From: Zootoca vivipara
Taxonomy: Eukaryota
Assembly (NCBI RefSeq): GCF_963506605.1
Contig: NC_083288.1
Coordinates: forward strand, 27,776,001 to 27,840,000
Direction: 5' to 3'
Length of the DNA stretch: 64,000 nucleotides
In this document: positions 46,118 to 55,139 of the stretch, piece by piece
How positions within the stretch are numbered: position 1 is the first letter of the stretch
Layout: the number at the start of each line of letters is the position of its first letter
Made by a program: the position numbers and the translations under genes
Notes under the pieces: model-generated
What the model saw: the letters and a program-made list of their open reading frames with translations, nothing else
Databases searched by the model: none
What the model was told of the DNA's origin: nothing

Positions 46118-47604
46118 CCTGAAATTTATACTTCTTCTCCCCCCCCACCCTTTAGCAACTGTTTTTCACTCCCCTATCCCTTGCATTCAATGCCTCTACC
46201 ACTTCCCTGCTTCTGGCAATATGATTTGTGACCTTTCCATACCCATTGTTTTTCAGTAAGCTTTCCACCAAAGGTTCCTAAGGCAGCAAAGAACAATAGC
46301 AAATAAAATTGTTGCTGATTAAAATATAAAGAGGAATCGCAATAAAACAGTGTTTGATGTGGACAGAAAGGGCCCTTTCAGTTTTCTCATTCATCTCCTT
46401 CATGGAGACATTTGGGAGAGGTTGATGGATGGATTTACTCAGTGCTTTTTATATTAAAAATAGTTTAGGGGTACTCTCATTTTGACTCAAGGAAATTAAC
46501 ATTTTATAGAAATAGACCTGTGGTGGGGGAGAGAAGGAAGTTCCACCGAAGCAGTTTCTGGGGTGGCCTTCTGCCTCCTGGAATAATTCTCACTGGACAG
46601 TTGGTGGTAAATGGTCCTGTGTGTTGTTGAGGAAAGGCAGTTTAGCTGGAAGCTCTGAGGCGGTCATTGCCTGCCTCTCTCTCCTGAAATTATTCCCATG
46701 GGAAGTTGATGGGAGGGTGTTTGAATAGGTGAAGCACATTTCTTTTAAGCCTATTTAATTTGCTTCAGAAATTGACATGATAACAAACGTATGTGTACCC
46801 TTACTTCTGGGTAACCTATATCAATGCTCCTAGATCTCTCACATCAGAGTAAGCTTCTTCAGGAAAAGTTGCCTAAAGGAACCGCTTCCTGTTGCCAAAA
46901 TTTAATTAGACATTTTCTAATGAAAGTCCATTACAGTTGAGACAATTTCCCTAGATAACACCCACAATTGCACTTCTAAATATGTGTATGTATACAAATA
47001 TATAATTGCATATCATTTTTAAGTGGCTTTCTTAAACTTATCCCTTTGGATTAACATAACTGTCAAATGTATTTAAAATATCTAAATGGTTGGTTTGTAA
47101 CATGTAAATTTAGAACGAGTTGCTTTTCTCTTTGAGCGAAATGATGCATTCTTATGGACCCTCAAGGAAATAAAATGTTGAAATGAAACTCTTTATTCAC
47201 AACACAGGTAAGATGATGCTTTTGTTCTGCTTAACTGTATATTCGCATCAGGGTTTCAGGAGTGTTTTCAATCACTCTGTCTTTTTCTTTTCTTTTCCCT
47301 TTCGCATACCTTATAGACAAGTAGATTCCTCCTGTTGTGTTCTTCAAGCTTCCAAACCTATGCATATTTGTCTGGGTGTAGAGCTCACAGAACTAAATAT
47401 TTATTTATCTATATATTTAAAACATTTATATGCTGCCCTTAAGTGAAAAGACTCTCTTAAGGCATCATCCATAGAACACCAATATGCCATACAATAAGAA
47501 ACAAATTAATGAAACAGTCTTCCAGCAAATATTAAAAGAAAGAAATATCCAATCCAGAATTAAACCAGAACTATAATTAAGACTGAACATAGCCAAAAGC
47601 ATGG

Positions 47605-48021
47605 TGTGAGGGACAAGGGATACAGGGAAGTCCCTCCCATCTTAAGTTCCAGCCCATCCCCAAGCGCTGGAGAGAGTAAGGAGAGCTCTGCCTCCAGCGG
47701 AGAGTCAGGAAGTGGTGTCCGAGGCTCAGGCAGGGTTGCGGAGCCCATGCCTCAGGTGGGACAGGAAGTTGGACGCACGGGGGGGAGGCCAATCCCCCCA
47801 ACTCCCGAATTGCGACGCAAACGTAGGGGGAAGAGGTTGGGTCTGCCAAAGCTGTGGTGCTGGAAGAAAACGCGCCAATCGCCATTCGGGAGTTCAGACA
47901 CCTCACCTTAAGGATGCATTTTTATTGCTCTGAACACTGTAAATAATCAGCACTTAATAAAAGCCTTAAAAGACCATGCTGGAGTCGTTACTCTAGAGTA
48001 GCCATACCAGGCCCTCTGACA
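47605..48021 (+). repeat. 5' LTR
   Basis: TG..CA; AATAAA at about 47956; 6 substitutions versus the 3' LTR by manual comparison. Confidence 0.97.
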
Positions 48022-48023
48022 GC

Positions 48024-48034
48024 AACTCCCGAAT
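48024..48034 (+). promoter_or_regulatory. Self-priming primer-binding site
   Basis: AACTCCCGAAT is the exact reverse complement of LTR 47884-47894; no TGG tRNA-type PBS is present. Confidence 0.8.
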
Positions 48035-48062
48035 CTTTTTTTGGCTACTTTGGAGTGCAGCG

Positions 48063-49304
48063 ATGAGCGCTCAAGAGGCTGAGCATTGGAGGCTGGAGGC
48101 CGAAGCAGCGAAGCAGGAGCTACAGAACCTCACAGCGCACGCACAGCAGCAATTGCATGCCGCTCAGGAGGAGGCGCGAGGGGCGCAGGAGGAGCTGAAC
48201 AAGCTGGTGGACCAGGTGAGGACAAAAGAGGAGACTGAGAAACAGCTAAGGGTGATGGTATTAGACCTGCAGAAAAAGTTGGAAGAGGAGAAAGCCGCTA
48301 GAGGTGGGGGGGCACCCCAGCCGCAGCTAGTCCAAGTGAGAAGGGGACAGAGCCTAGTCACCAAGTTCAGCGGAGACCCGAGGGAGTACCTCGGATTCGA
48401 GACAGAAATAAATTATGCGCTGGAATTGCATGCAGCAGAATTCCCAGATGACGCGCACAGAGTCTACTTTATCATAGAGCATTTGACGGGGGCCGCCCGG
48501 GAATGGGTAAGACCGCTCATCGCGCAAAAAAATCCTTGCATGAAGAACGCAACTTTATTTCTAGAAGCTTTAAAATTAATGTACGCTAGCGACAGTGAAA
48601 TGGAGGCCACTAAACAGGAGCTTCATGACTTAACACAAGGAAAATCGACAGTTAGGGACTACTGGGCGAAATTCACCATGCTGGTGCACAAACTGGGGTG
48701 GGATCTGAACAGTGAGCCAGTGAAATCAGCCTTCTACCTGGGTTTGCATGCAGACGTTAAGGATGAGCTGGCAAGAGGTCCTAGACCGCAGACTATGGAT
48801 CAGCTCAGCAAAGCGGCGCTAGCGGTGGGGGTGAGACAGGAATCCAGATGGTATGACAAACAAGCGACGCGCGCAGCAAAACCTTGGTTCCCACGCTCTC
48901 AGGACAGACCACATCACCAAACCCCACCCCAGGGACCGCCCCCAGACCCGCCCAGACCAAGCCCAGAGCCGGAACCGATGGAGATCGGGGGAGCGCGCGC
49001 GCGGGCTTTTCAAACCCCGGCGGCACCAAGACGCAAGGAGGGAAGAGGCGGGAATTGCTTTCTCTGCAACTCCCCCCGGCATCGCGTCAGAGACTGCCCT
49101 CATCGCAGAGAGTGGCAAGGAAAGGCGGGAACGGTTGTACCTTCCCCCACTGACGTAGCACCACAGCAGGGAAACGAGACAGCCTGGCTGCAGGAGACAA
49201 GGGGCAGCAGCCAGGCACAGTCAGCAGTGAACAGCCCCAGCCCGCCCACCCGCACAGAGAGGAGCAGAGCCAGCCCACCCCTCCCAGAGCAGGAGTGGTT
49301 CTAG
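48063..49304 (+). CDS. Gag (PEG10/RTL-like capsid, coiled-coil N-terminus, CCHC knuckle)
   Basis: KFSGDP, LTQGKSTVRDY, PEPMEIG, CFLCNSPRHRVRDC. Confidence 0.93.
   Translation: MSAQEAEHWRLEAEAAKQELQNLTAHAQQQLHAAQEEARGAQEELNKLVDQVRTKEETEKQLRVMVLDLQKKLEEEKAARGGGAPQPQLVQVRRGQSLVTKFSGDPREYLGFETEINYALELHAAEFPDDAHRVYFIIEHLTGAAREWVRPLIAQKNPCMKNATLFLEALKLMYASDSEMEATKQELHDLTQGKSTVRDYWAKFTMLVHKLGWDLNSEPVKSAFYLGLHADVKDELARGPRPQTMDQLSKAALAVGVRQESRWYDKQATRAAKPWFPRSQDRPHHQTPPQGPPPDPPRPSPEPEPMEIGGARARAFQTPAAPRRKEGRGGNCFLCNSPRHRVRDCPHRREWQGKAGTVVPSPTDVAPQQGNETAWLQETRGSSQAQSAVNSPSPPTRTERSRASPPLPEQEWF
49169..49216 (+). promoter_or_regulatory. -1 ribosomal frameshift signal
   Basis: G GGA AAC in the gag frame, 6-nt spacer, 10-bp stem GCCTGGCTGC / GCAGCCAGGC; the -1 frame is open into pol. 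Confidence 0.88.
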
Positions 49305-52300
49305 AAGTCACGCTGACGCTCCCAAATGGCTATCCCCTGACAGTCCTCGCCTTAATTGACAGTGGTGCCTCCGCCAACTTCTTCTCGAGAAACTTTGCAG
49401 AAGAGCACCAGATCCAACTTCTGCAGCTGGATTTTCCCCTGCACGTGGCCACCATTGATGGCAGAGAGTTGCTGGGAGGGGCCATCACTCATCAAACCCC
49501 CCCCATGAGAATGACAGTGGGAAGGCACTCAGAGACACTGGCTTTCAACGTCACGACCATCTCAGACCCCCCCATCGTTTTGGGAATGAGCTGGCTGGCG
49601 CGCCACGACCCCTCCATAAGTTGGCACCAGAGATGCATCACGTTTGGGTCGGACTTTTGTCTGGAACATTGCATGCAGCACCAACCAGGGGAGGGGCCTC
49701 CGATAGCCACGGTGGCCACCATGCACGTCAAAGGGGGTGAGGCGATACCCAAGCCGTACTGGGACCTGCAGGAGGTCTTCAGCGAAGCGGAGTCCGACCA
49801 CCTACCTCCACACAGGCCTTTTGACTGCCAGATCAACCTGGTGCCAGGGGCAACTATACCCCCAGCCAAGCTGTACGCCATGTCAGACCAGGAACTGGAG
49901 GATCTGCGCGCTTTCATCGACAAGAACCTCAAGCGGGGGTTCATCAGAGAAAGCAAGGCAGCAGGGGGCAGCCCGGTCTTCTGGGTGGACAAGAAAGACA
50001 CGCAACAGCGCCGTCTGGTGGTGGATTTTAGACGGCTGAATTCAGTGACAGAGCCAGTGGCTTTCCCCATGCCCAGAGTGGATGATCTTCTGACAGCGGC
50101 ACGCAGGGGCAAGATTTTCACCAAGCTAGACCTAAGAGGGGCGTACAACTTGATCAGGATCCGGGAGGGCGATGAATGGAAAACCACGATGTTCACGCCT
50201 CTGGGCTCTTTTGAATATCTGGTGATGCCCTTCGGGTTGCAAGGGGGCTCAGCCTGCTTCCAGGCCTTCATGCACCACGTCCTGGGGTCCCTCCTCTTCA
50301 AGAACTGCTTGGTCTTTCTGGATGACATCCTTATCTATTCCAATGACCCAGTGCAGCATGTGAAGGATGTCAGGGAGGTGTTGCAGCGCCTGAAGGACAA
50401 CCACCTGTATGTGAAGCTGGAGAAGTGCAAGTTTCACACCAAGGAGGTGGACTTCCTGGGCTACAAGCTGTCAGACAAGGGGCTGGCGATGGACAAGGAC
50501 AAGGTGCAGACCATCCTGGACTGGCACAGCCCCAGGACGCGCAAAGATGCCCAACGCCTACTAGGCTTCGCTAACTTCTACAGGAAGTTCATCAAGAACT
50601 TCTCTCGTGTCACGGCTCCCATCACCGACTGCCTGAGAGGCAAGCAGAAGTTCAGGTGGACACCAGAGGCACAAGCAGCGTTCGAAAGCCTCAAGAGGGT
50701 ATTCGCTTCAGACCAGCACCTGTTCCACGTGGTGCAGGATGCGCCCCTACGCCTGGAGACAGATGCTTCTGATAAAGCTGTGGGAGCGATTCTGTTGCAA
50801 CTGGACGCCAACAGAGAGTGGAGACCCTGTGCCTTCTTCTCCAGGAAGCTGACCCAGCCTGAACGCAACTACACAGTTTTTGATAGGGAACTTCTCGCGA
50901 TCCACGCTGCGTTCCAGCACTGGCGACACTTCCTGGTGGGCGCCAAGCACCCCATCCAGGTGTGCACAGACCACAAGAACCTGGAGTTCTGGAGAACGGC
51001 CAGGGTGCTCAACCAGCGGCAGATACGGTGGGCAGAGTTCTTCTCGAACTTCAACTTCTCCATCCACTACATCCCGGGGGAGCAGAACGTCAGGGCGGAT
51101 GCCCTCTCCCGCAAGCCAGAGTACATGGAGGAGGAGTTGCCACCAGCACCCAGGCACGTTTTCCCCCCATCTGCATGGTCATGCGGTGCAGCAGTGGTGA
51201 GCGAGGCAGAACTCACCGCACTGACGGCAGCGGATGAATTTGCCACCCGCATCTTCAGAGACCTGAGAGGGGGGAGGGAGCAGGCCAAAGACTTTGAGGA
51301 AAGGAGGGGTTTGCTTTTTTACAGGGGAGCCCTGTACCTCCCAACCAAACAGCTGAGAGGTAAGGTTCTCAAGCAGATGCACGACAACCCAACGGCGGGT
51401 CATTTCGGAAGGGACAAAACCACTCACCTAGTCATGAGACACTTCTGGTGGCCAGGGGTGCGGGAGGATGTTCGGGATTATTATGTCAGGGATGTGACAC
51501 CTGCCAGCGAGCAAAGGTGGTCAGAGCGCCACCAGCAGGTTTGCTGGAGCCATTAGCCACACCGCACAGGCCGTGGGAAGTAGTGTCCATGGACTTCATC
51601 ACAGACCTGCCGTCGTCCAGGGGCAAGACCGCAGTGTTGGTGGTGGTGGACCTCATGTCCAAAATGTGCCACTTTATACCGTGTGCCAGGGCGGTCTCGG
51701 CAGAAGAGACGGCCAAACTGTTTGTGGACCACGTATTCCGACTGCATGGATTGCCTTTAAGAGTTATTTCGGATCGTGGCCGCCAATTTGTTTCCAGGTT
51801 CTGGCGACGGCTAATGAACCTCCTGCAGGTGGAGGTCAGCTTGTCGACGGCTCGGCACCCGCAGACCAATGGACAGGCGGAGCGGGTCAACGCCATTCTG
51901 CAGCAGTACCTGAGATGTTACGTCAGCCAGAGGCAAACGGACTGGGTGGATCGCCTGCCACTAGCAGAATTTGCCTACAACAATGCGGTGCACGTCTCCA
52001 CAGGGGTGTCGCCCTTTAAGGCCAATTACGGGCGCGACCTCAGATCTTTCCCGGAGAGGGAGGGGGAGGAGGAGGAAGAGGGCCCACAGGCAGAGGATTG
52101 GGCAGAGGACCTGGAGACGGTGCACCAGCAGCTCCGAGAACACTTGGAGAGGGCCAAGGAAGCGTACAAGAAGGGGGCAGATCGCCACAGGCGGCCGGGA
52201 GAGGTCATCAGGGTGGGGGACAAGGTTTGGTTATCCTCGGAAGGTCTTCCCACCAGGGGGCGATGCAAAAAGTTAGCACCCAGGAGGCTGGGCCCCTTCA

Positions 52301-53310
52301 CGGTCACGCAACAGGTCAACCCGGTAGCCTTCAGGCTAGCACTGCCGGAGGACATGAGAGTGCACCCAGTGTTTCATAGATCACTGCTGTCGCCGTACAG
52401 GGAAAGTACCAGGTTCAGGGACAGCGATCAACCTCCAGAGGGAGGGGGGGAGACGGGAAACGCCCGACAGCTCAATGAGGCAACTGAGATTTTAGACTCA
52501 AGGAGAGGGGTGAGAGGGCTGGAGTACCTGATAGCATGGGAGGACACTCCGCCATCCCACAATGAGTGGATACCGGCCACGGAAGTACCTGAGGAATTTT
52601 TAGTGGAAGAGTTCCACGCCCTGTTCCCCCACAGGCCCAAGCCCTGGCACATGGAAAGGGAGGGAGAGGGGGAGGAGCAGGAGGAAGGGATAGCAGGCAG
52701 CAGCTCCCCATGGAGATGGGAAGCGGAATTTGAGGACACGGAAGAAGAGGTGTGGGTTTCACCGAGGTCGACGACGTCAGAGGCAGGAGAGGACTGGCAG
52801 AACATTTTTACTCCCACCAGCTCTGATGCCACTGACTTCTTGGGATTTCCGTCTTCTCAGGGGGAAGGAGAGAGATCGCCGGATTGGGGGGAAATTTTCA
52901 CACCCACAGGCTCGGATGCCACTGACTTCTTGGGATTTCACTCGTCCCCAGCAAGCAGAGAGCCACTAGGGAGGGGGAGAGAGGAGCCTGGGAGGGGGGT
53001 GGATGTGAGGGACAAGGGATACAGGGAAGTCCCTCCCATCTTAAGTTCCAGCCCATCCCCAAGCGCTGGAGAGAGTAAGGAGAGCTCTGCCTCCAGCGGA
53101 GAGTCAGGAAGTAGTGTCCGAGGCTCAGGCAGGGTTGTGGAGCCCATGCCTCAGGTGGGACAGGAAGTTGGATGCACGGGGGGGAGGCCAATCCCCCCAG
53201 CTCCCGAATTGCGACGCAAACGTAGGGGGAAGAGGTTGGGTCTGCCAAAGTTGTGGTGCTGGAAGAAAACGCGCCAATCGCCATTCGGGAGTTCAGACAC
53301 CTCACCTTAA
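49169..53310 (+). CDS. Pol (protease, RT, RNase H, integrase, GPF motif, chromodomain, acidic tail); one frameshift at about 51490
   Basis: LIDSGA protease, FLDD RT, TDAS RNase H, H-H-C-C and D,D(35)E integrase, LGPF, EILDSR..EYLIAW..NEWI chromodomain; ORF-track segments 49295-51556 and 51448-53310. Confidence 0.93.
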
Positions 53311-53420
53311 GGATGCATTTTTATTGCTCTGAACACTGTAAATAATCAGCACTTAATAAAAGCCTTAAAAGACCATGCTGGAGTCGTTACTCTAGAGTAG
53401 CCATACCAGGGCCTCTGACA
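53004..53420 (+). repeat. 3' LTR
   Basis: Follows the polypurine tract GGGAGGGGGGTGGA; TG..CA. Confidence 0.97.
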
Positions 53421-54209
53421 CATGGTATTCCTTTTTAAAAAGTAGTTAAAACAATTGGGGTTTTGTAGCACCTGTAACAGTGCTAGATTGAAGCGATTGA
53501 TTCAAAACCTAGTTGTCATTATGGTTTATTTATTTTGACTTTATTATTATTTTTTCTAAAATACAGAAACTGGGGAAGAAAGAACAGCAGAATCAATAGA
53601 TACAAGAATAAGTAACACCCCACTGCTGTCCCCTCATGTTCTACAGACCCCCAGACACTGTTTTGGATGGCAAGTGACAGAATAGTAATGGATAATCAAA
53701 GGCATATATTCTGTTCATAGGTCAAATGCCAATTAAAATAAATATTTGCAATATTTAAATATATAAAGAGAAATGTAATATTAATAATGTTCATTTTGTA
53801 AACTCATAATTGAGTAATTTATCTTAGCACTGTCTATGTGAAATTTTGTTCTGTTCTGGAGAATGAAACTTTTTTCTGTGTTAGTTAGAATATGGATAAA
53901 CTAACTAAAACACAATCATAGCATGGGGATGCGAGCTAAAAATAGGGAGGATGGAATGAACAACTTACAGAAAGAAGCATTTTTACCACTGCAGGTTAAC
54001 CTAGCATGCACCTATGTCAGGATGAAGAGAATAGCTTCTTCAGCAAATATTTGGGTGTGGGCATGGATTTTGTTTCTGGGCTTACATGACACAACGATTG
54101 ATAAATATGGATTTTGTAGTAGCTGAGGTGTTGATAATGGGAACTATAAAACCATTCTGTTTGGGCTGACTGATTTCCCCCCCTGTCTTCAGACTAAAGG
54201 GATCCAAAT

Positions 54210-55139
54210 ATGGCACGAGATAATCACACGGCATTTTCTGACTTTATTCTCCTTGGATACTCAAATCTCCCAGATCTCCAAGGTTTGCTATTTTCTGTGT
54301 TCCTGATCACATATTCAGGCATTCTAATAGGAAATGGACTAATCATTTATGTTACAATATCTGACCCTGCCCTTCACACTCCTATGTATTTCTTTTTGAG
54401 GAACCTGTCTTTCCTGGAGATCTGCTATACTTCAGTCACTGTGCCGAATATGGCGGCCAATTTAGTGGCAGAAAAGAGCAACATTTCATTCCTTGGCTGT
54501 GCTGCCCAGATCTACTTCCTACTTATACTAGGAGGCACAGAGTGCTTCCTATTGACTGCCATGGCTTATGATCGATATGTGGCCATATGTAACCCCTTGT
54601 ATTATAAGCTCATCATGAACAAGCAATTCTGTTTGGTACTCATCACTGGATCATTGGTTGTCAACATGTCCATACATGCGGGGCAAATATATCTAGTGTT
54701 CACCTTGCCCTTTTGTGACTCTCATGAAATCAATAACTTATTCTGTGATATACCCCCACTGCTTGATCTGGCCTGCGCTGACACCAATGTTAACCAGTTA
54801 ATTGTGTTTGCAGCTGCCGTAGTTTTCTTGATCATCCCTTTTTTCCTTATCTTTGCTTCTTATGTGAAAATAATTTCTGCTATTCTGAAGATGCCTTCAG
54901 CAGACGGTCGGAAGAAAGTGTTCTCCACTTGCTCCTCACACCTTATTGTTGTATCTCTATTTTATGGCTCAGCAACTATTGTATATCTGAGTCCTAGGTC
55001 AAAGGAGACAGAAGACATTAATAAGTTGCTTTCCTTGTTCTATACCATTTTAGTTCCTATGTTTAACCCCATCATATATAGCCTGAGAAACAGGGAAGTG
55101 AAAGTATCCCTGAGAAAATTGTTGGGTAGGAAAATGTGA
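54210..55139 (+). CDS. Class II olfactory receptor (OR-9, 309 aa; OR10-like)
   Basis: Intact OR motifs; same acceptor and leader as OR-8. Confidence 0.95.
   Translation: MARDNHTAFSDFILLGYSNLPDLQGLLFSVFLITYSGILIGNGLIIYVTISDPALHTPMYFFLRNLSFLEICYTSVTVPNMAANLVAEKSNISFLGCAAQIYFLLILGGTECFLLTAMAYDRYVAICNPLYYKLIMNKQFCLVLITGSLVVNMSIHAGQIYLVFTLPFCDSHEINNLFCDIPPLLDLACADTNVNQLIVFAAAVVFLIIPFFLIFASYVKIISAILKMPSADGRKKVFSTCSSHLIVVSLFYGSATIVYLSPRSKETEDINKLLSLFYTILVPMFNPIIYSLRNREVKVSLRKLLGRKM

What the first reader, a model, noticed from the sequence alone, without database searches (positions are those of the whole stretch)
52795..52938. Gypsy integrase tail carries tandem LEDGF/TND-binding-like FxGF motifs: candidate host-tethering system for integration
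Seen: after the chromodomain, pol continues through an acidic, Ser/Thr-rich tail with two repeats 30 aa apart, WQNIFTPTSSDATDFLGF (52795-52848) and WGEIFTPTGSDATDFLGF (52885-52938). Across the 15-codon IF..GF core they differ by four synonymous changes (TTT/TTC, ACT/ACA, ACC/ACA, TCT/TCG) and one replacement (S/G), which points to selection on the peptide, though the sample is small. Established: acidic FxGF motifs preceded by a hydrophobic/Phe anchor (IBM/TIM) bind the LEDGF/p75 integrase-binding domain and other TFIIS-N-terminal domains, as in JPO2/CDCA7L, MLL1, PogZ and IWS1, and nearby Ser phosphorylation strengthens binding. From memory, JPO2 also has two tandem IF-x(8-10)-FxGF motifs; spacing here is IF-x9-FLGF. 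Inference: this retrotransposon may mimic the motif to dock on LEDGF/HRP2 or elongation factors, convergent with lentiviral LEDGF tethering and paired with a chromodomain. I do not know of this being described for vertebrate chromoviruses, but I could not search the literature.
Basis: partly seen in the sequence, partly recalled or inferred. Interest (0 to 1): 0.9.

Follow-up and report, generated by a model that had tools for sequence, protein, structure and literature searches.

The report
Lizard retrotransposon integrase tail with LEDGF-type motifs
A young gypsy-type retrotransposon carries, in the floppy tail of its integrase, two copies of a short peptide that has been conserved by selection across a whole clade of lizard elements. 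The peptide matches the published signature that cellular proteins use to dock on the chromatin readers LEDGF/HRP2, so it is a strong but still unproven candidate for an integration-targeting handle.

Summary
The element is a full-length Ty3/gypsy chromovirus with 417-nt LTRs (98.3% alike) and a 5-bp target duplication. After the chromodomain, its pol encodes W-x3-F-x9-F-L-G-F twice, at 52795-52848 and 52885-52938.

The motif is selected, not a chance repeat:
- Between the two copies the 15-codon core has 4 synonymous and 1 replacement change (dN/dS 0.06). The flanks of the repeat unit are saturated.
- All 5 listed family variants inside the motifs are synonymous.
- The same motif, often doubled, stands after the chromodomain in every sampled member of one well-supported clade (SH-aLRT 100). 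The named members are all from the lizard Podarcis muralis. Folded domains in this clade are only 46-63% identical.
- The motif is absent from the 24 other chromovirus rows in the tree.
- AlphaFold2 predicts the tail to be disordered.

The motif fits the published definition of a TND-interacting motif: hydrophobic anchor, acidic/Ser-Thr linker of 8-16 residues, then (S/E)xFxGF.

A new point: the same clade has lost two or three of the aromatic-cage residues of its chromodomain. That suggests a switch of targeting device.

Binding to LEDGF/HRP2 could not be tested here, and no paper describing this was found.

The parts
47600..47604 (+). Target-site duplication, left copy (CATGG)
   Evidence: Same 5 bases at 53421-53425 directly outside the LTR ends
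47605..48021 (+). 5' LTR (TG...CA, 417 nt)
   Evidence: Alignment of the two ends; blastn gives 98.3% identity, 6 mismatches and 1 gap
48063..49304 (+). gag ORF (413 aa)
   Evidence: Pfam Retrotrans_gag 1.3e-13 and Ty3_capsid 3.4e-11
49295..51556 (+). pol part 1: protease, RT, RNase H, integrase zinc-binding domain. Frame -1 relative to gag.
   Evidence: Pfam RVP_2, RVT_1, RT_RNaseH, Integrase_H2C2; frames
51481..51484 (+). Place where this copy changes reading frame inside the integrase zinc-binding region. This is the only break seen in pol.
   Evidence: Frame A reads through EDVRDY (ends at 51481). Frame B reads on from CQGCDTC (starts at 51484). Relatives read straight through.
51448..53310 (+). 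pol part 2 (620-aa ORF): integrase core, SH3-like domain, chromodomain, disordered tail. It runs about 300 nt into the 3' LTR.
   Evidence: Pfam rve 1.2e-13, SH3_Tf2-1 1e-18, Chromo 3e-6
52480..52617 (+). Chromodomain. Cage positions are N (52474-76), W (52537-39) and T (52546-48), so two of the three aromatic residues are missing.
   Evidence: Pfam. AF2 pLDDT above 90. The cage triad is aromatic-W-aromatic in 69 of 70 other chromoviruses, but N/H/G - W/R/K/E - T/E/A (one F) in all 15 rows of this clade.
52714..52761 (+). Degenerate upstream motif A (RWEAEF-EDTEEE-VWVS). It has the anchor and acidic linker, but VWVS stands where FxGF would be.
   Evidence: By eye, not by a tool alignment, it corresponds to the intact first motif of P0001, P0162 and P0166
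52795..52848 (+). Motif B1: W-QN-IF / TPTSSDATD / FLGF
   Evidence: The family variants here, 52827 and 52848, are both synonymous.
52885..52938 (+). Motif B2: W-GE-IF / TPTGSDATD / FLGF
   Evidence: The family variants here, 52899, 52923 and 52935, are all synonymous.
52968..53003 (+). Polypurine tract region directly before the 3' LTR
   Evidence: Purine-rich run read
53004..53420 (+). 3' LTR. Its first 300 nt or so are also the end of the pol ORF.
53421..53425 (+). Target-site duplication, right copy (CATGG)

Best explanation
The two repeats are functional short linear motifs in the intrinsically disordered C-terminal tail of the integrase.

Each has the three-part build of an FxGF-type TND-interacting motif (TIM, also called LEDGF IBD-binding motif, IBM):
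- a short hydrophobic anchor, W-x-x-[I/V]-F;
- an acidic, phosphorylatable linker of 8-9 residues;
- F-x-G-F.

The proposed mechanism is inferred, not shown. After reverse transcription, the integrase in the intasome uses these motifs, two per chain and more per multimer, to dock on the TFIIS-N-terminal-type domain (IBD) of the H3K36me3 readers LEDGF/PSIP1 and HRP2/HDGFL2, or possibly another TND protein of the elongation machinery. This would tether integration to transcribed chromatin. Phosphorylation of the Ser/Thr linker would strengthen binding.

The clade that carries the motif has also lost the methyl-lysine cage of its chromodomain. The motif therefore probably replaced, rather than supplemented, chromodomain-based targeting.

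Shown here: the motif is real, old, selected at the peptide level, clade-wide, in a predicted disordered region, and fits the published consensus.
Inferred: the partner and the effect on integration.
For: (1) Selection between the two copies. Core dN/dS is 0.057 (4 synonymous, 1 replacement; Fisher p 0.0096). The rest of the 30-codon unit is saturated.

(2) Selection within the family. More than 3,000 contig pieces of a DNA run lie on the stretch. Of the best-supported variants:
- the tail has 10 synonymous and 3 non-synonymous (10 of 13 at third codon positions, p 0.0016);
- all 5 variants inside the motif cores are synonymous;
- the folded domains have 16 synonymous and 2 non-synonymous;
- the LTR-encoded end has 3 synonymous and 5 non-synonymous.
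A second species (organism B) has contigs spanning both motifs. Their listed differences are all synonymous apart from one linker P>Q.

(3) Deep conservation. Relatives with only 46-63% identity in the folded domains carry the same motif after the chromodomain, singly or doubled. These are P0001, P0002 and the Podarcis muralis proteins P0005, P0152, P0156-P0163 and P0166.
- In the tree all 14 such rows form one clade (SH-aLRT 100, stem length 0.99). One further row inside the clade, P0167, ends before the tail.
- The Anolis, Rhineura and Vipera sisters and the 20 more distant rows lack the motif.
- Within the Podarcis P0005 group, 14 of 16 motif columns are invariant, against 20% of the remaining tail.
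- The only variable FxGF position is x (L, V, R, E, K, Q, H).

(4) Chance is excluded. The full pattern appears in 0.015-0.3% of composition-preserving shuffles per tail.

(5) Disorder. In the AF2 model the SH3 and chromodomain have pLDDT above 90. The tail has pLDDT 43-55 and no secondary structure.

(6) Fit to published definitions.
- The IBM consensus is D/ExExFxGF (PMC8022399) or S/ExFxGF (PMC7337902).
- The DPF3a peptide LFGSTSESDTSTFHGFDEDD binds the HRP2 IBD, and more strongly when phosphorylated (PMC7337902). It has the same build: hydrophobic residue then F, a 10-residue Ser/Thr/acidic stretch, then FxGF.
- The TIM review defines an anchoring helix with F/V/L/I, an acidic/Ser/Thr/Gly linker of 8-16 residues and an FxGF. 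It states that every known LEDGF/HRP2 TND partner has the FxGF part and needs it for binding (PMC9987994).
- The relatives have E or S at position -2. The window copy and P0002 have T.

(7) Location. An integrase C-terminal tail is where other retroelements carry tethering peptides (established knowledge: MLV IN-BET, Ty5 IN-Sir4).

(8) Cage loss in exactly this clade (cage residues as defined in PMC3350952).
Against: - No binding test of any kind was possible.
- A short-motif match is not proof of partner.
- The window copy has Thr rather than the consensus Glu/Ser at -2.
- No helix is predicted for the anchor in isolation. Helices that form only on binding would not be expected to show, so this is weak evidence.
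- A phmmer search of the tail against PDB chains did not retrieve IBM peptides.
- The link between cage loss and motif gain rests on one branch, that is, one evolutionary event.
- No RNA reads covered the tail in the one RNA run laid, of which about 6% was read.
- Only 40 of 98 variant rows were displayed by read laying.
Confidence: 0.5

Rival explanations
1. The motif is a selected short linear motif, but its partner is not a TND. Candidates are a nuclear-import or other trafficking factor, an Atg8-type LIR (W-x-x-I/V), a PEX14-type W-x-x-x-F ligand, a cleavage site for the element's own protease (F|P after FxGF), or a contact with the element's own capsid or integrase multimer.
For: - Binding is untested.
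- W-x-x-x-F is present in 10 of 11 motif instances and W-x-x-[ILV] in 7 of 11.
- Pro follows FxGF in 5 of 11 instances.
- Conserved motifs in disordered tails can serve many partners.
Against: - The only invariant feature across all lineages is F-x-G-F with a preceding acidic/Ser/Thr run at fixed spacing. None of these alternatives explains that.
- The LIR core fails in 4 of 11 instances and W-x-x-x-F fails in the Podarcis P0005 group.
- Pro at +1 is not conserved. It is H in B2, and V, S and T elsewhere.
- Conservation spans about 18 residues, longer than a protease site.
- The complete three-part build is the published TIM definition.
Confidence: 0.38
2. The tail folds back on the element's own cage-less chromodomain or SH3-like domain, so the motif serves an intramolecular or structural role rather than a host contact.
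For: Motif gain and cage loss fall on the same branch. The nearest solved chromodomains by sequence are the peptide-binding cpSRP43 type.
Against: In the AF2 model the tail is uniformly low-confidence, has no secondary structure and shows no sign of docking. Tandem, variably spaced copies are typical of multivalent intermolecular motifs.
Confidence: 0.08
3. There is no peptide function. The repeat is a neutral tandem duplication, or the conservation reflects a nucleotide-level signal near the polypurine tract.
For: The repeat lies about 30-170 nt upstream of the PPT. The sample of changes between the two copies is small.
Against: - The nucleotides vary while the peptide stays: 4 of 5 core changes between the copies and 5 of 5 family variants in the cores are synonymous.
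- The flanks of the duplicated unit are saturated while the core is kept.
- The peptide is conserved in lineages whose folded domains are only 46-63% identical.
Confidence: 0.03

Closest known systems
IBD-binding motifs (IBM), or FxGF-type TND-interacting motifs (TIM), of cellular LEDGF/HRP2 partners: JPO2/CDCA7L, MLL1/KMT2A, PogZ, IWS1, ASK/DBF4, MED1, DPF3a and Drosophila JIL-1
   Same: The build is close to the DPF3a peptide shown to bind the HRP2 IBD (PMC7337902, PMC8022399, PMC9987994).
   Different: It is carried by a retrotransposon integrase, not a host transcription factor. The anchor has a conserved Trp. The window copy has Thr at -2. Binding is untested.
Lentiviral integrase-LEDGF/p75 (and HRP2) tethering
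   Same: An integrase would use the same host domain to direct integration into transcribed chromatin.
   Different: By established knowledge, lentiviral integrase binds the IBD through a folded interface of the catalytic-core-domain dimer. PMC10854676 contrasts its structurally prearranged binding site with the unstructured IBM of cellular partners. Here it would be true mimicry of the cellular linear motif, placed in the C-terminal tail.
Gammaretroviral (MLV) integrase C-terminal tail binding the BET ET domain, and the Ty5 integrase targeting domain binding Sir4 (established knowledge, not checked here)
   Same: A short peptide in the disordered C-terminal part of an integrase tethers the intasome to a chromatin protein. 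For Ty5 the contact is controlled by phosphorylation.
   Different: Different motif and different host partner. These are experimentally proven and this one is not.
Group II chromodomains of plant chromoviruses
   Same: A chromodomain that keeps its fold but lacks the Y24 and Y48 cage residues (PMC3350952).
   Different: That paper (2012) states that group II was known only from plant elements and that vertebrate elements carry classical group I. Here a squamate clade shows the same loss, independently of plants and together with a new tail motif.

Membership tests
FxGF-type TIM / LEDGF-HRP2 IBD-binding motif | F-x-G-F core | tested here: met
   FLGF occurs twice in the window. FxGF is present in 11 of 12 motif instances across the clade. 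The exception is FEEF in the first motif of P0163.
FxGF-type TIM / LEDGF-HRP2 IBD-binding motif | Acidic or phosphorylatable residue at -2 and -4 (D/E-x-E/S-x-F-x-G-F) | tested here: inconclusive
   The window copy reads D-A-T-D-FLGF, so -4 is D and -2 is T. Thr is phosphorylatable but is not the published E/S. The relatives have E or S at -2 (P0001, P0162, P0163, P0166 motif 1, P0005); P0002 has T. Consensus taken from PMC8022399 and PMC7337902.
FxGF-type TIM / LEDGF-HRP2 IBD-binding motif | Acidic/Ser/Thr/Gly-rich flexible linker of 8-16 residues between anchor and FxGF | tested here: met
   9 residues (TPTSSDATD and TPTGSDATD) in the window; 8-9 in the relatives. Range taken from PMC9987994.
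FxGF-type TIM / LEDGF-HRP2 IBD-binding motif | Upstream short helix that anchors through F/V/L/I side chains | tested here: inconclusive
   A conserved W-x-x-[I/V/Q]-F is in the right place. The AF2 model of the free protein shows no helix there, but such helices would be expected to form only on binding.
FxGF-type TIM / LEDGF-HRP2 IBD-binding motif | Lies in an intrinsically disordered region | tested here: met
   Tail pLDDT is 43-55 with no secondary structure, next to domains with pLDDT above 90.
FxGF-type TIM / LEDGF-HRP2 IBD-binding motif | Binds a TND/IBD, and the binding is lost on F-to-A change | not testable with these tools
   No TND sequence could be obtained. Complex prediction references cover bacteria, archaea and phages only.
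Chromovirus (Ty3/gypsy LTR retrotransposon with chromodomain) | LTRs, target duplication, gag, PR-RT-RH-IN order, chromodomain at the integrase C-terminus | tested here: met
Classical (group I) retrotransposon chromodomain | Aromatic cage of Y24, W45 and Y48 equivalents | tested here: not met
   The triad is N-W-T in the window. In the clade it is N/H/G - W/R/K/E - T/E/A (one F). In 69 of 70 other chromoviruses it is aromatic-W-aromatic. Cage residues as defined in PMC3350952.
Atg8-interacting LIR motif | [W/F/Y]-x-x-[L/I/V] conserved, with acidic context | tested here: not met
   Present in both window copies, but fails in 4 of 11 instances across the clade (WEEQ twice, WEAG, WLFT).

The most novel reading that the evidence does not exclude
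A clade of squamate chromoviruses gave up methyl-lysine reading by its chromodomain and evolved true linear-motif mimicry of host LEDGF/HRP2 partners in its integrase tail. It keeps two working copies by motif turnover: one copy decays and another is duplicated. This would be the first retrotransposon known to use the LEDGF/HRP2 (TND) tether, convergent with lentiviruses but by a different molecular route. It would also be the first TIM found outside cellular transcription factors.
Probability: 0.45. Interest if true: 0.9.

Novelty: new variant of a known kind. Interest (0 to 1): 0.75.

Why it matters
How retroelements choose where to integrate is a central question for genome evolution and for the safety of gene-therapy vectors. 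Only a few host tethers are known: LEDGF for lentiviruses, BET proteins for gammaretroviruses, Sir4, Pol III factors and Sap1 for yeast elements, and H3K9me for chromoviruses.

If confirmed, this would be a natural element that reaches the LEDGF/HRP2 tether by copying the cell's own docking peptide. That would have several consequences:
- The tether would have been found twice, independently.
- It would provide a portable peptide of about 20 residues for directing integrases to transcribed chromatin.
- It would add retroelements to the list of TIM users.
- It would be a documented case of a targeting device being swapped within one lineage.

Every part of this is directly testable with peptides and the host IBD.

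Tried and rejected
- **Protein search on the tail alone**: 504 candidates, none significant. The length window excludes full-length pol proteins, so this says little.
- **phmmer of the tail against PDB chains**: only chance hits (endothiapepsin, RexA). No IBM-carrying chain was retrieved, as expected for a short motif.
- **ESM Atlas look-alikes of the tail**: no usable hit.
- **Literature searches** joined retrotransposon or gypsy with LEDGF, TND, TIM or FxGF. None describes such a motif in a retrotransposon integrase. Tesina 2015, Sharma 2018 and Cermakova 2021 are not held, so the consensus was taken from papers that cite them.
The DNA and source organisms of P0001 (Logan) and P0002 (ENA) could not be obtained.
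- **RNA run X21**: its reads lie only on the chromodomain and LTR parts. They are under 90% alike and have loose ends, so they come from a related subfamily. There is no evidence for or against expression of this tail.
- **Rejected readings:**
  - A recent neutral duplication: dS is about 0.5 against LTR divergence of about 1.7%.
  - A nucleotide-level signal: the changes are synonymous.
  - The GPY/F module of gypsy integrases: that is LGPF in the SH3-like domain, upstream of the chromodomain.
  - The FLGF of the RT/RNase H connection (LQxFLGF), a structured-domain motif found in many hits.

Full report
**What is there**

The window holds one complete Ty3/gypsy chromovirus.
- The LTRs are 417 nt each, at 47605-48021 and 53004-53420, with TG...CA ends. 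They differ by 6 mismatches and 1 gap (98.3%). They are flanked by a 5-bp target-site duplication, CATGG.
- gag (48063-49304) has Retrotrans_gag and Ty3_capsid domains.
- pol follows in the -1 frame (49295-51556: protease, RT, RNase H, integrase zinc domain).
- After a single change of frame at about 51481-51484, pol continues as a 620-aa ORF (51448-53310). This ORF holds the integrase core, the Tf2-type SH3 domain and a chromodomain at aa 345-390.
- This copy is therefore young but has one break in pol.
- The ORF passes through the polypurine tract (about 52968-53003) and runs 300 nt into the 3' LTR.

**The observation**

- The repeat finder reports the 66-nt direct repeat at 80% identity. 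The 24-nt core occurs twice, against zero expected.
- The codon count is right. In the IF..GF core there are 4 synonymous changes and 1 replacement: 4/10.7 against 1/34.3 sites, dN/dS 0.057, Fisher p 0.0096.
- The remaining 12 codons of the 30-codon unit are diverged to saturation.
- With dS about 0.5 against LTR divergence of about 1.7%, the duplication is far older than this insertion. Only the motif has been kept in both halves.

**Selection within the family**

More than 3,000 contig pieces of one DNA run lie on 52200-53420, so the family is abundant. I classified the best-supported differences, 40 of 98 rows:

| Region | Synonymous | Non-synonymous |
|---|---|---|
| SH3 and chromodomain | 16 | 2 |
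| Tail | 10 | 3 |
| LTR-encoded end of the ORF | 3 | 5 |

- In the tail, 10 of 13 variants are at third codon positions (p 0.0016).
- All five variants inside the two motif cores are synonymous (52827, 52848, 52899, 52923, 52935).
- The three replacements lie in linker or acidic stretches (aa 408, 410, 478).
- The tail is therefore about as constrained as the folded domains.
- Contigs of a second species (organism B) span both motifs. Their listed differences are the same, synonymous apart from the linker P>Q.

**Conservation beyond the family**

An exhaustive HMMER search with SH3, chromodomain and tail found 8,869 relatives.
- Among the best 150, only the nearest ones (P0001, P0002, P0005) have F-x-G-F after the chromodomain. 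There it sits in the same build.
- Further searches added the Podarcis muralis proteins P0151, P0152, P0156-P0163 and P0166.
- Examples: FWEEQF-ATTDEEEED-FVGF and WEAVF-ESTDDDSSS-FRGF (P0001); WKTVF-ESDENEDTD-FLGF (P0002); WGNVF-EDTEDEDEI-FLGF (P0166); DWLF-TPTLSAST-FQGF (P0005 group).
- The clade-wide pattern is [W/F]-x1-3-F, then 8-9 acidic/Ser/Thr residues, then F-x-G-F. Only x is free (L, V, R, E, K, Q, H).
- Composition-preserving shuffles give the pattern in 0.015-0.3% of trials per tail.
- In the Podarcis P0005 group, 14 of 16 motif columns are invariant. That compares with 55% of the columns before the motif (mostly chromodomain) and 20% of the remaining tail.

A maximum-likelihood tree of the integrase-SH3-chromodomain part (39 rows) was built.
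- It puts all 14 motif-bearing rows in one clade (SH-aLRT 100, stem 0.99 changes per site). A fifteenth row in that clade, P0167, ends before the tail.
- Its sisters from Anolis, Rhineura and Vipera and the 20 more distant rows lack the motif.
- The motif therefore arose once and has been kept in every sampled descendant.
- Double motifs are common (P0001, P0162, P0166 and this element).
- In the window, a degenerate upstream copy (RWEAEF-EDTEEE-VWVS, 52714-52761) appears by eye to correspond to the intact first motif of P0001. This suggests turnover: one copy decayed and the second was duplicated.

**Context of the motif**

AlphaFold2 with an 85-row alignment folds the SH3 and chromodomain with pLDDT above 90. 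It leaves the tail at pLDDT 43-55 with no secondary structure. The motifs therefore lie in a predicted disordered region.

**Comparison with what is published**

- LEDGF's IBD binds a consensus D/ExExFxGF (PMC8022399).
- HRP2's IBD binds S/ExFxGF. The DPF3a peptide LFGSTSESDTSTFHGFDEDD binds it, more strongly with a phospho-serine, and binding is lost on F-to-A change (PMC7337902).
- The TND review defines a TIM as an anchoring helix (F/V/L/I), an acidic linker of 8-16 residues rich in Gly/Ser/Thr that is often phosphorylated, and an FxGF. It states that every known LEDGF/HRP2 TND partner has the FxGF part, where it is essential for the interaction.
- The review's section on viral mimicry names only lentiviral integrases (PMC9987994). 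By established knowledge these bind through a folded interface.
- The element's motif meets the FxGF, linker and disorder criteria. It has a conserved hydrophobic anchor in the right place. At -2 it has E/S in most relatives, and T in the window copy and P0002.
- I found no paper that joins FxGF, TIM or LEDGF with a retrotransposon integrase.

**A new supporting observation: loss of the chromodomain cage**

The chromodomain's aromatic cage consists of the Y24, W45 and Y48 equivalents (PMC3350952).
- It is aromatic-W-aromatic in 69 of 70 other chromoviruses in the alignment.
- In all 15 rows of the FxGF clade the first position is N, H or G. The third is T, E or A (one F). In the Podarcis P0005 group the W is lost too.
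- The cited paper (2012) says such group-II-type chromodomains were known only from plant elements.
- Cage loss and motif gain fall on the same long branch. This is a single event, so it is suggestive only. It fits a switch from histone-mark reading to a protein tether.

**Most likely mechanism** (confidence 0.5)

The tail motifs are TIM/IBM mimics. They would dock the integrase, multivalently, on the IBD of LEDGF/HRP2 or on another TND protein of the elongation machinery, and so bias integration to transcribed chromatin. Phosphorylation of the linker would tune the affinity.
- Shown: the reality, age, selection, clade-wide retention, disorder and consensus fit of the motif.
- Inferred: the partner and the consequence for integration.

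**Rivals**

- A selected motif with another partner (0.38). Neither the LIR-like W-x-x-I/V nor the PEX14-type W-x-x-x-F is conserved across the clade. A protease site does not explain 18 conserved residues.
- Fold-back on the element's own chromodomain (0.08). The model gives no hint of docking.
- No peptide function (0.03). This is contradicted by the synonymous pattern.

**Limits**

- No binding test could be run. No TND sequence was available and complex prediction does not offer eukaryotic references.
- All named relatives within the FxGF clade are from one species, Podarcis muralis. The sister chromoviruses are also squamate (Anolis, Rhineura, Vipera).
- Read laying shows only the best-supported variants.
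I did not check these.

**Verdict**

The LEDGF/TND reading is the best available and is specific enough to test in a week of biochemistry, but it is unproven. Novelty: a new variant of known kinds (tethering by an integrase tail, and TIM motifs), apparently undescribed. Interest 0.75.

Noticed in passing
53004-53310 (also 47606-47911 in the 5' LTR): The pol ORF does not stop at the polypurine tract. It reads about 300 nt into U3 of the 3' LTR. The peptide at the LTR start (VDVR[E/D]) and a basic end with LLCWK[K/R] recur in P0001 and P0002 (VDVTE in P0002). VDVRE alone also recurs in P0162 and P0166. So an LTR-encoded integrase C-terminus may be a clade feature. Against this, family variants in this part are 3 synonymous to 5 non-synonymous. 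One contig of organism B also has a 1-nt deletion at 52978 that would end the frame at 53006.
   Followed up: partly
52474-52548: The chromodomain lacks the Y24- and Y48-equivalent cage residues (N and T here). This state was described in 2012 as known only from plant chromoviruses (group II). The nearest solved chromodomains by sequence are the cpSRP43 type.
   Followed up: yes
48022-48062: The sequence just after the 5' LTR (GCAACTCCCGAATC...) does not start with the usual TGG of a tRNA primer-binding site. An earlier first-reader note (s1-853142) suggests self-priming. I did not examine this.
   Followed up: no
54210-55139: An intact 309-aa ORF that looks like an olfactory receptor lies about 790 nt downstream of the 3' LTR, on the same strand. 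So this young insertion sits next to a gene.
   Followed up: no
52591-52677 and 53004-53167: RNA-seq reads of run X21 match only the chromodomain and LTR parts, at under 90% identity and with consistent loose ends. They seem to come from a transcribed, diverged sister subfamily whose tail differs after 52677.
   Followed up: partly
P0174 (Anolis carolinensis), tail: The sister-clade Anolis element, which keeps its cage, has ...IVMPDEEENLGFLPS... in its tail. That is an acidic run followed by x-L-G-F without the first Phe. It may be a precursor or a relative of the FxGF motif.
   Followed up: no
P0005 group (Podarcis muralis), tail: A second conserved block, SYWW[D/E], lies about 30 residues after the FxGF motif in all eight Podarcis subfamily proteins. 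Its function is unknown.
   Followed up: no
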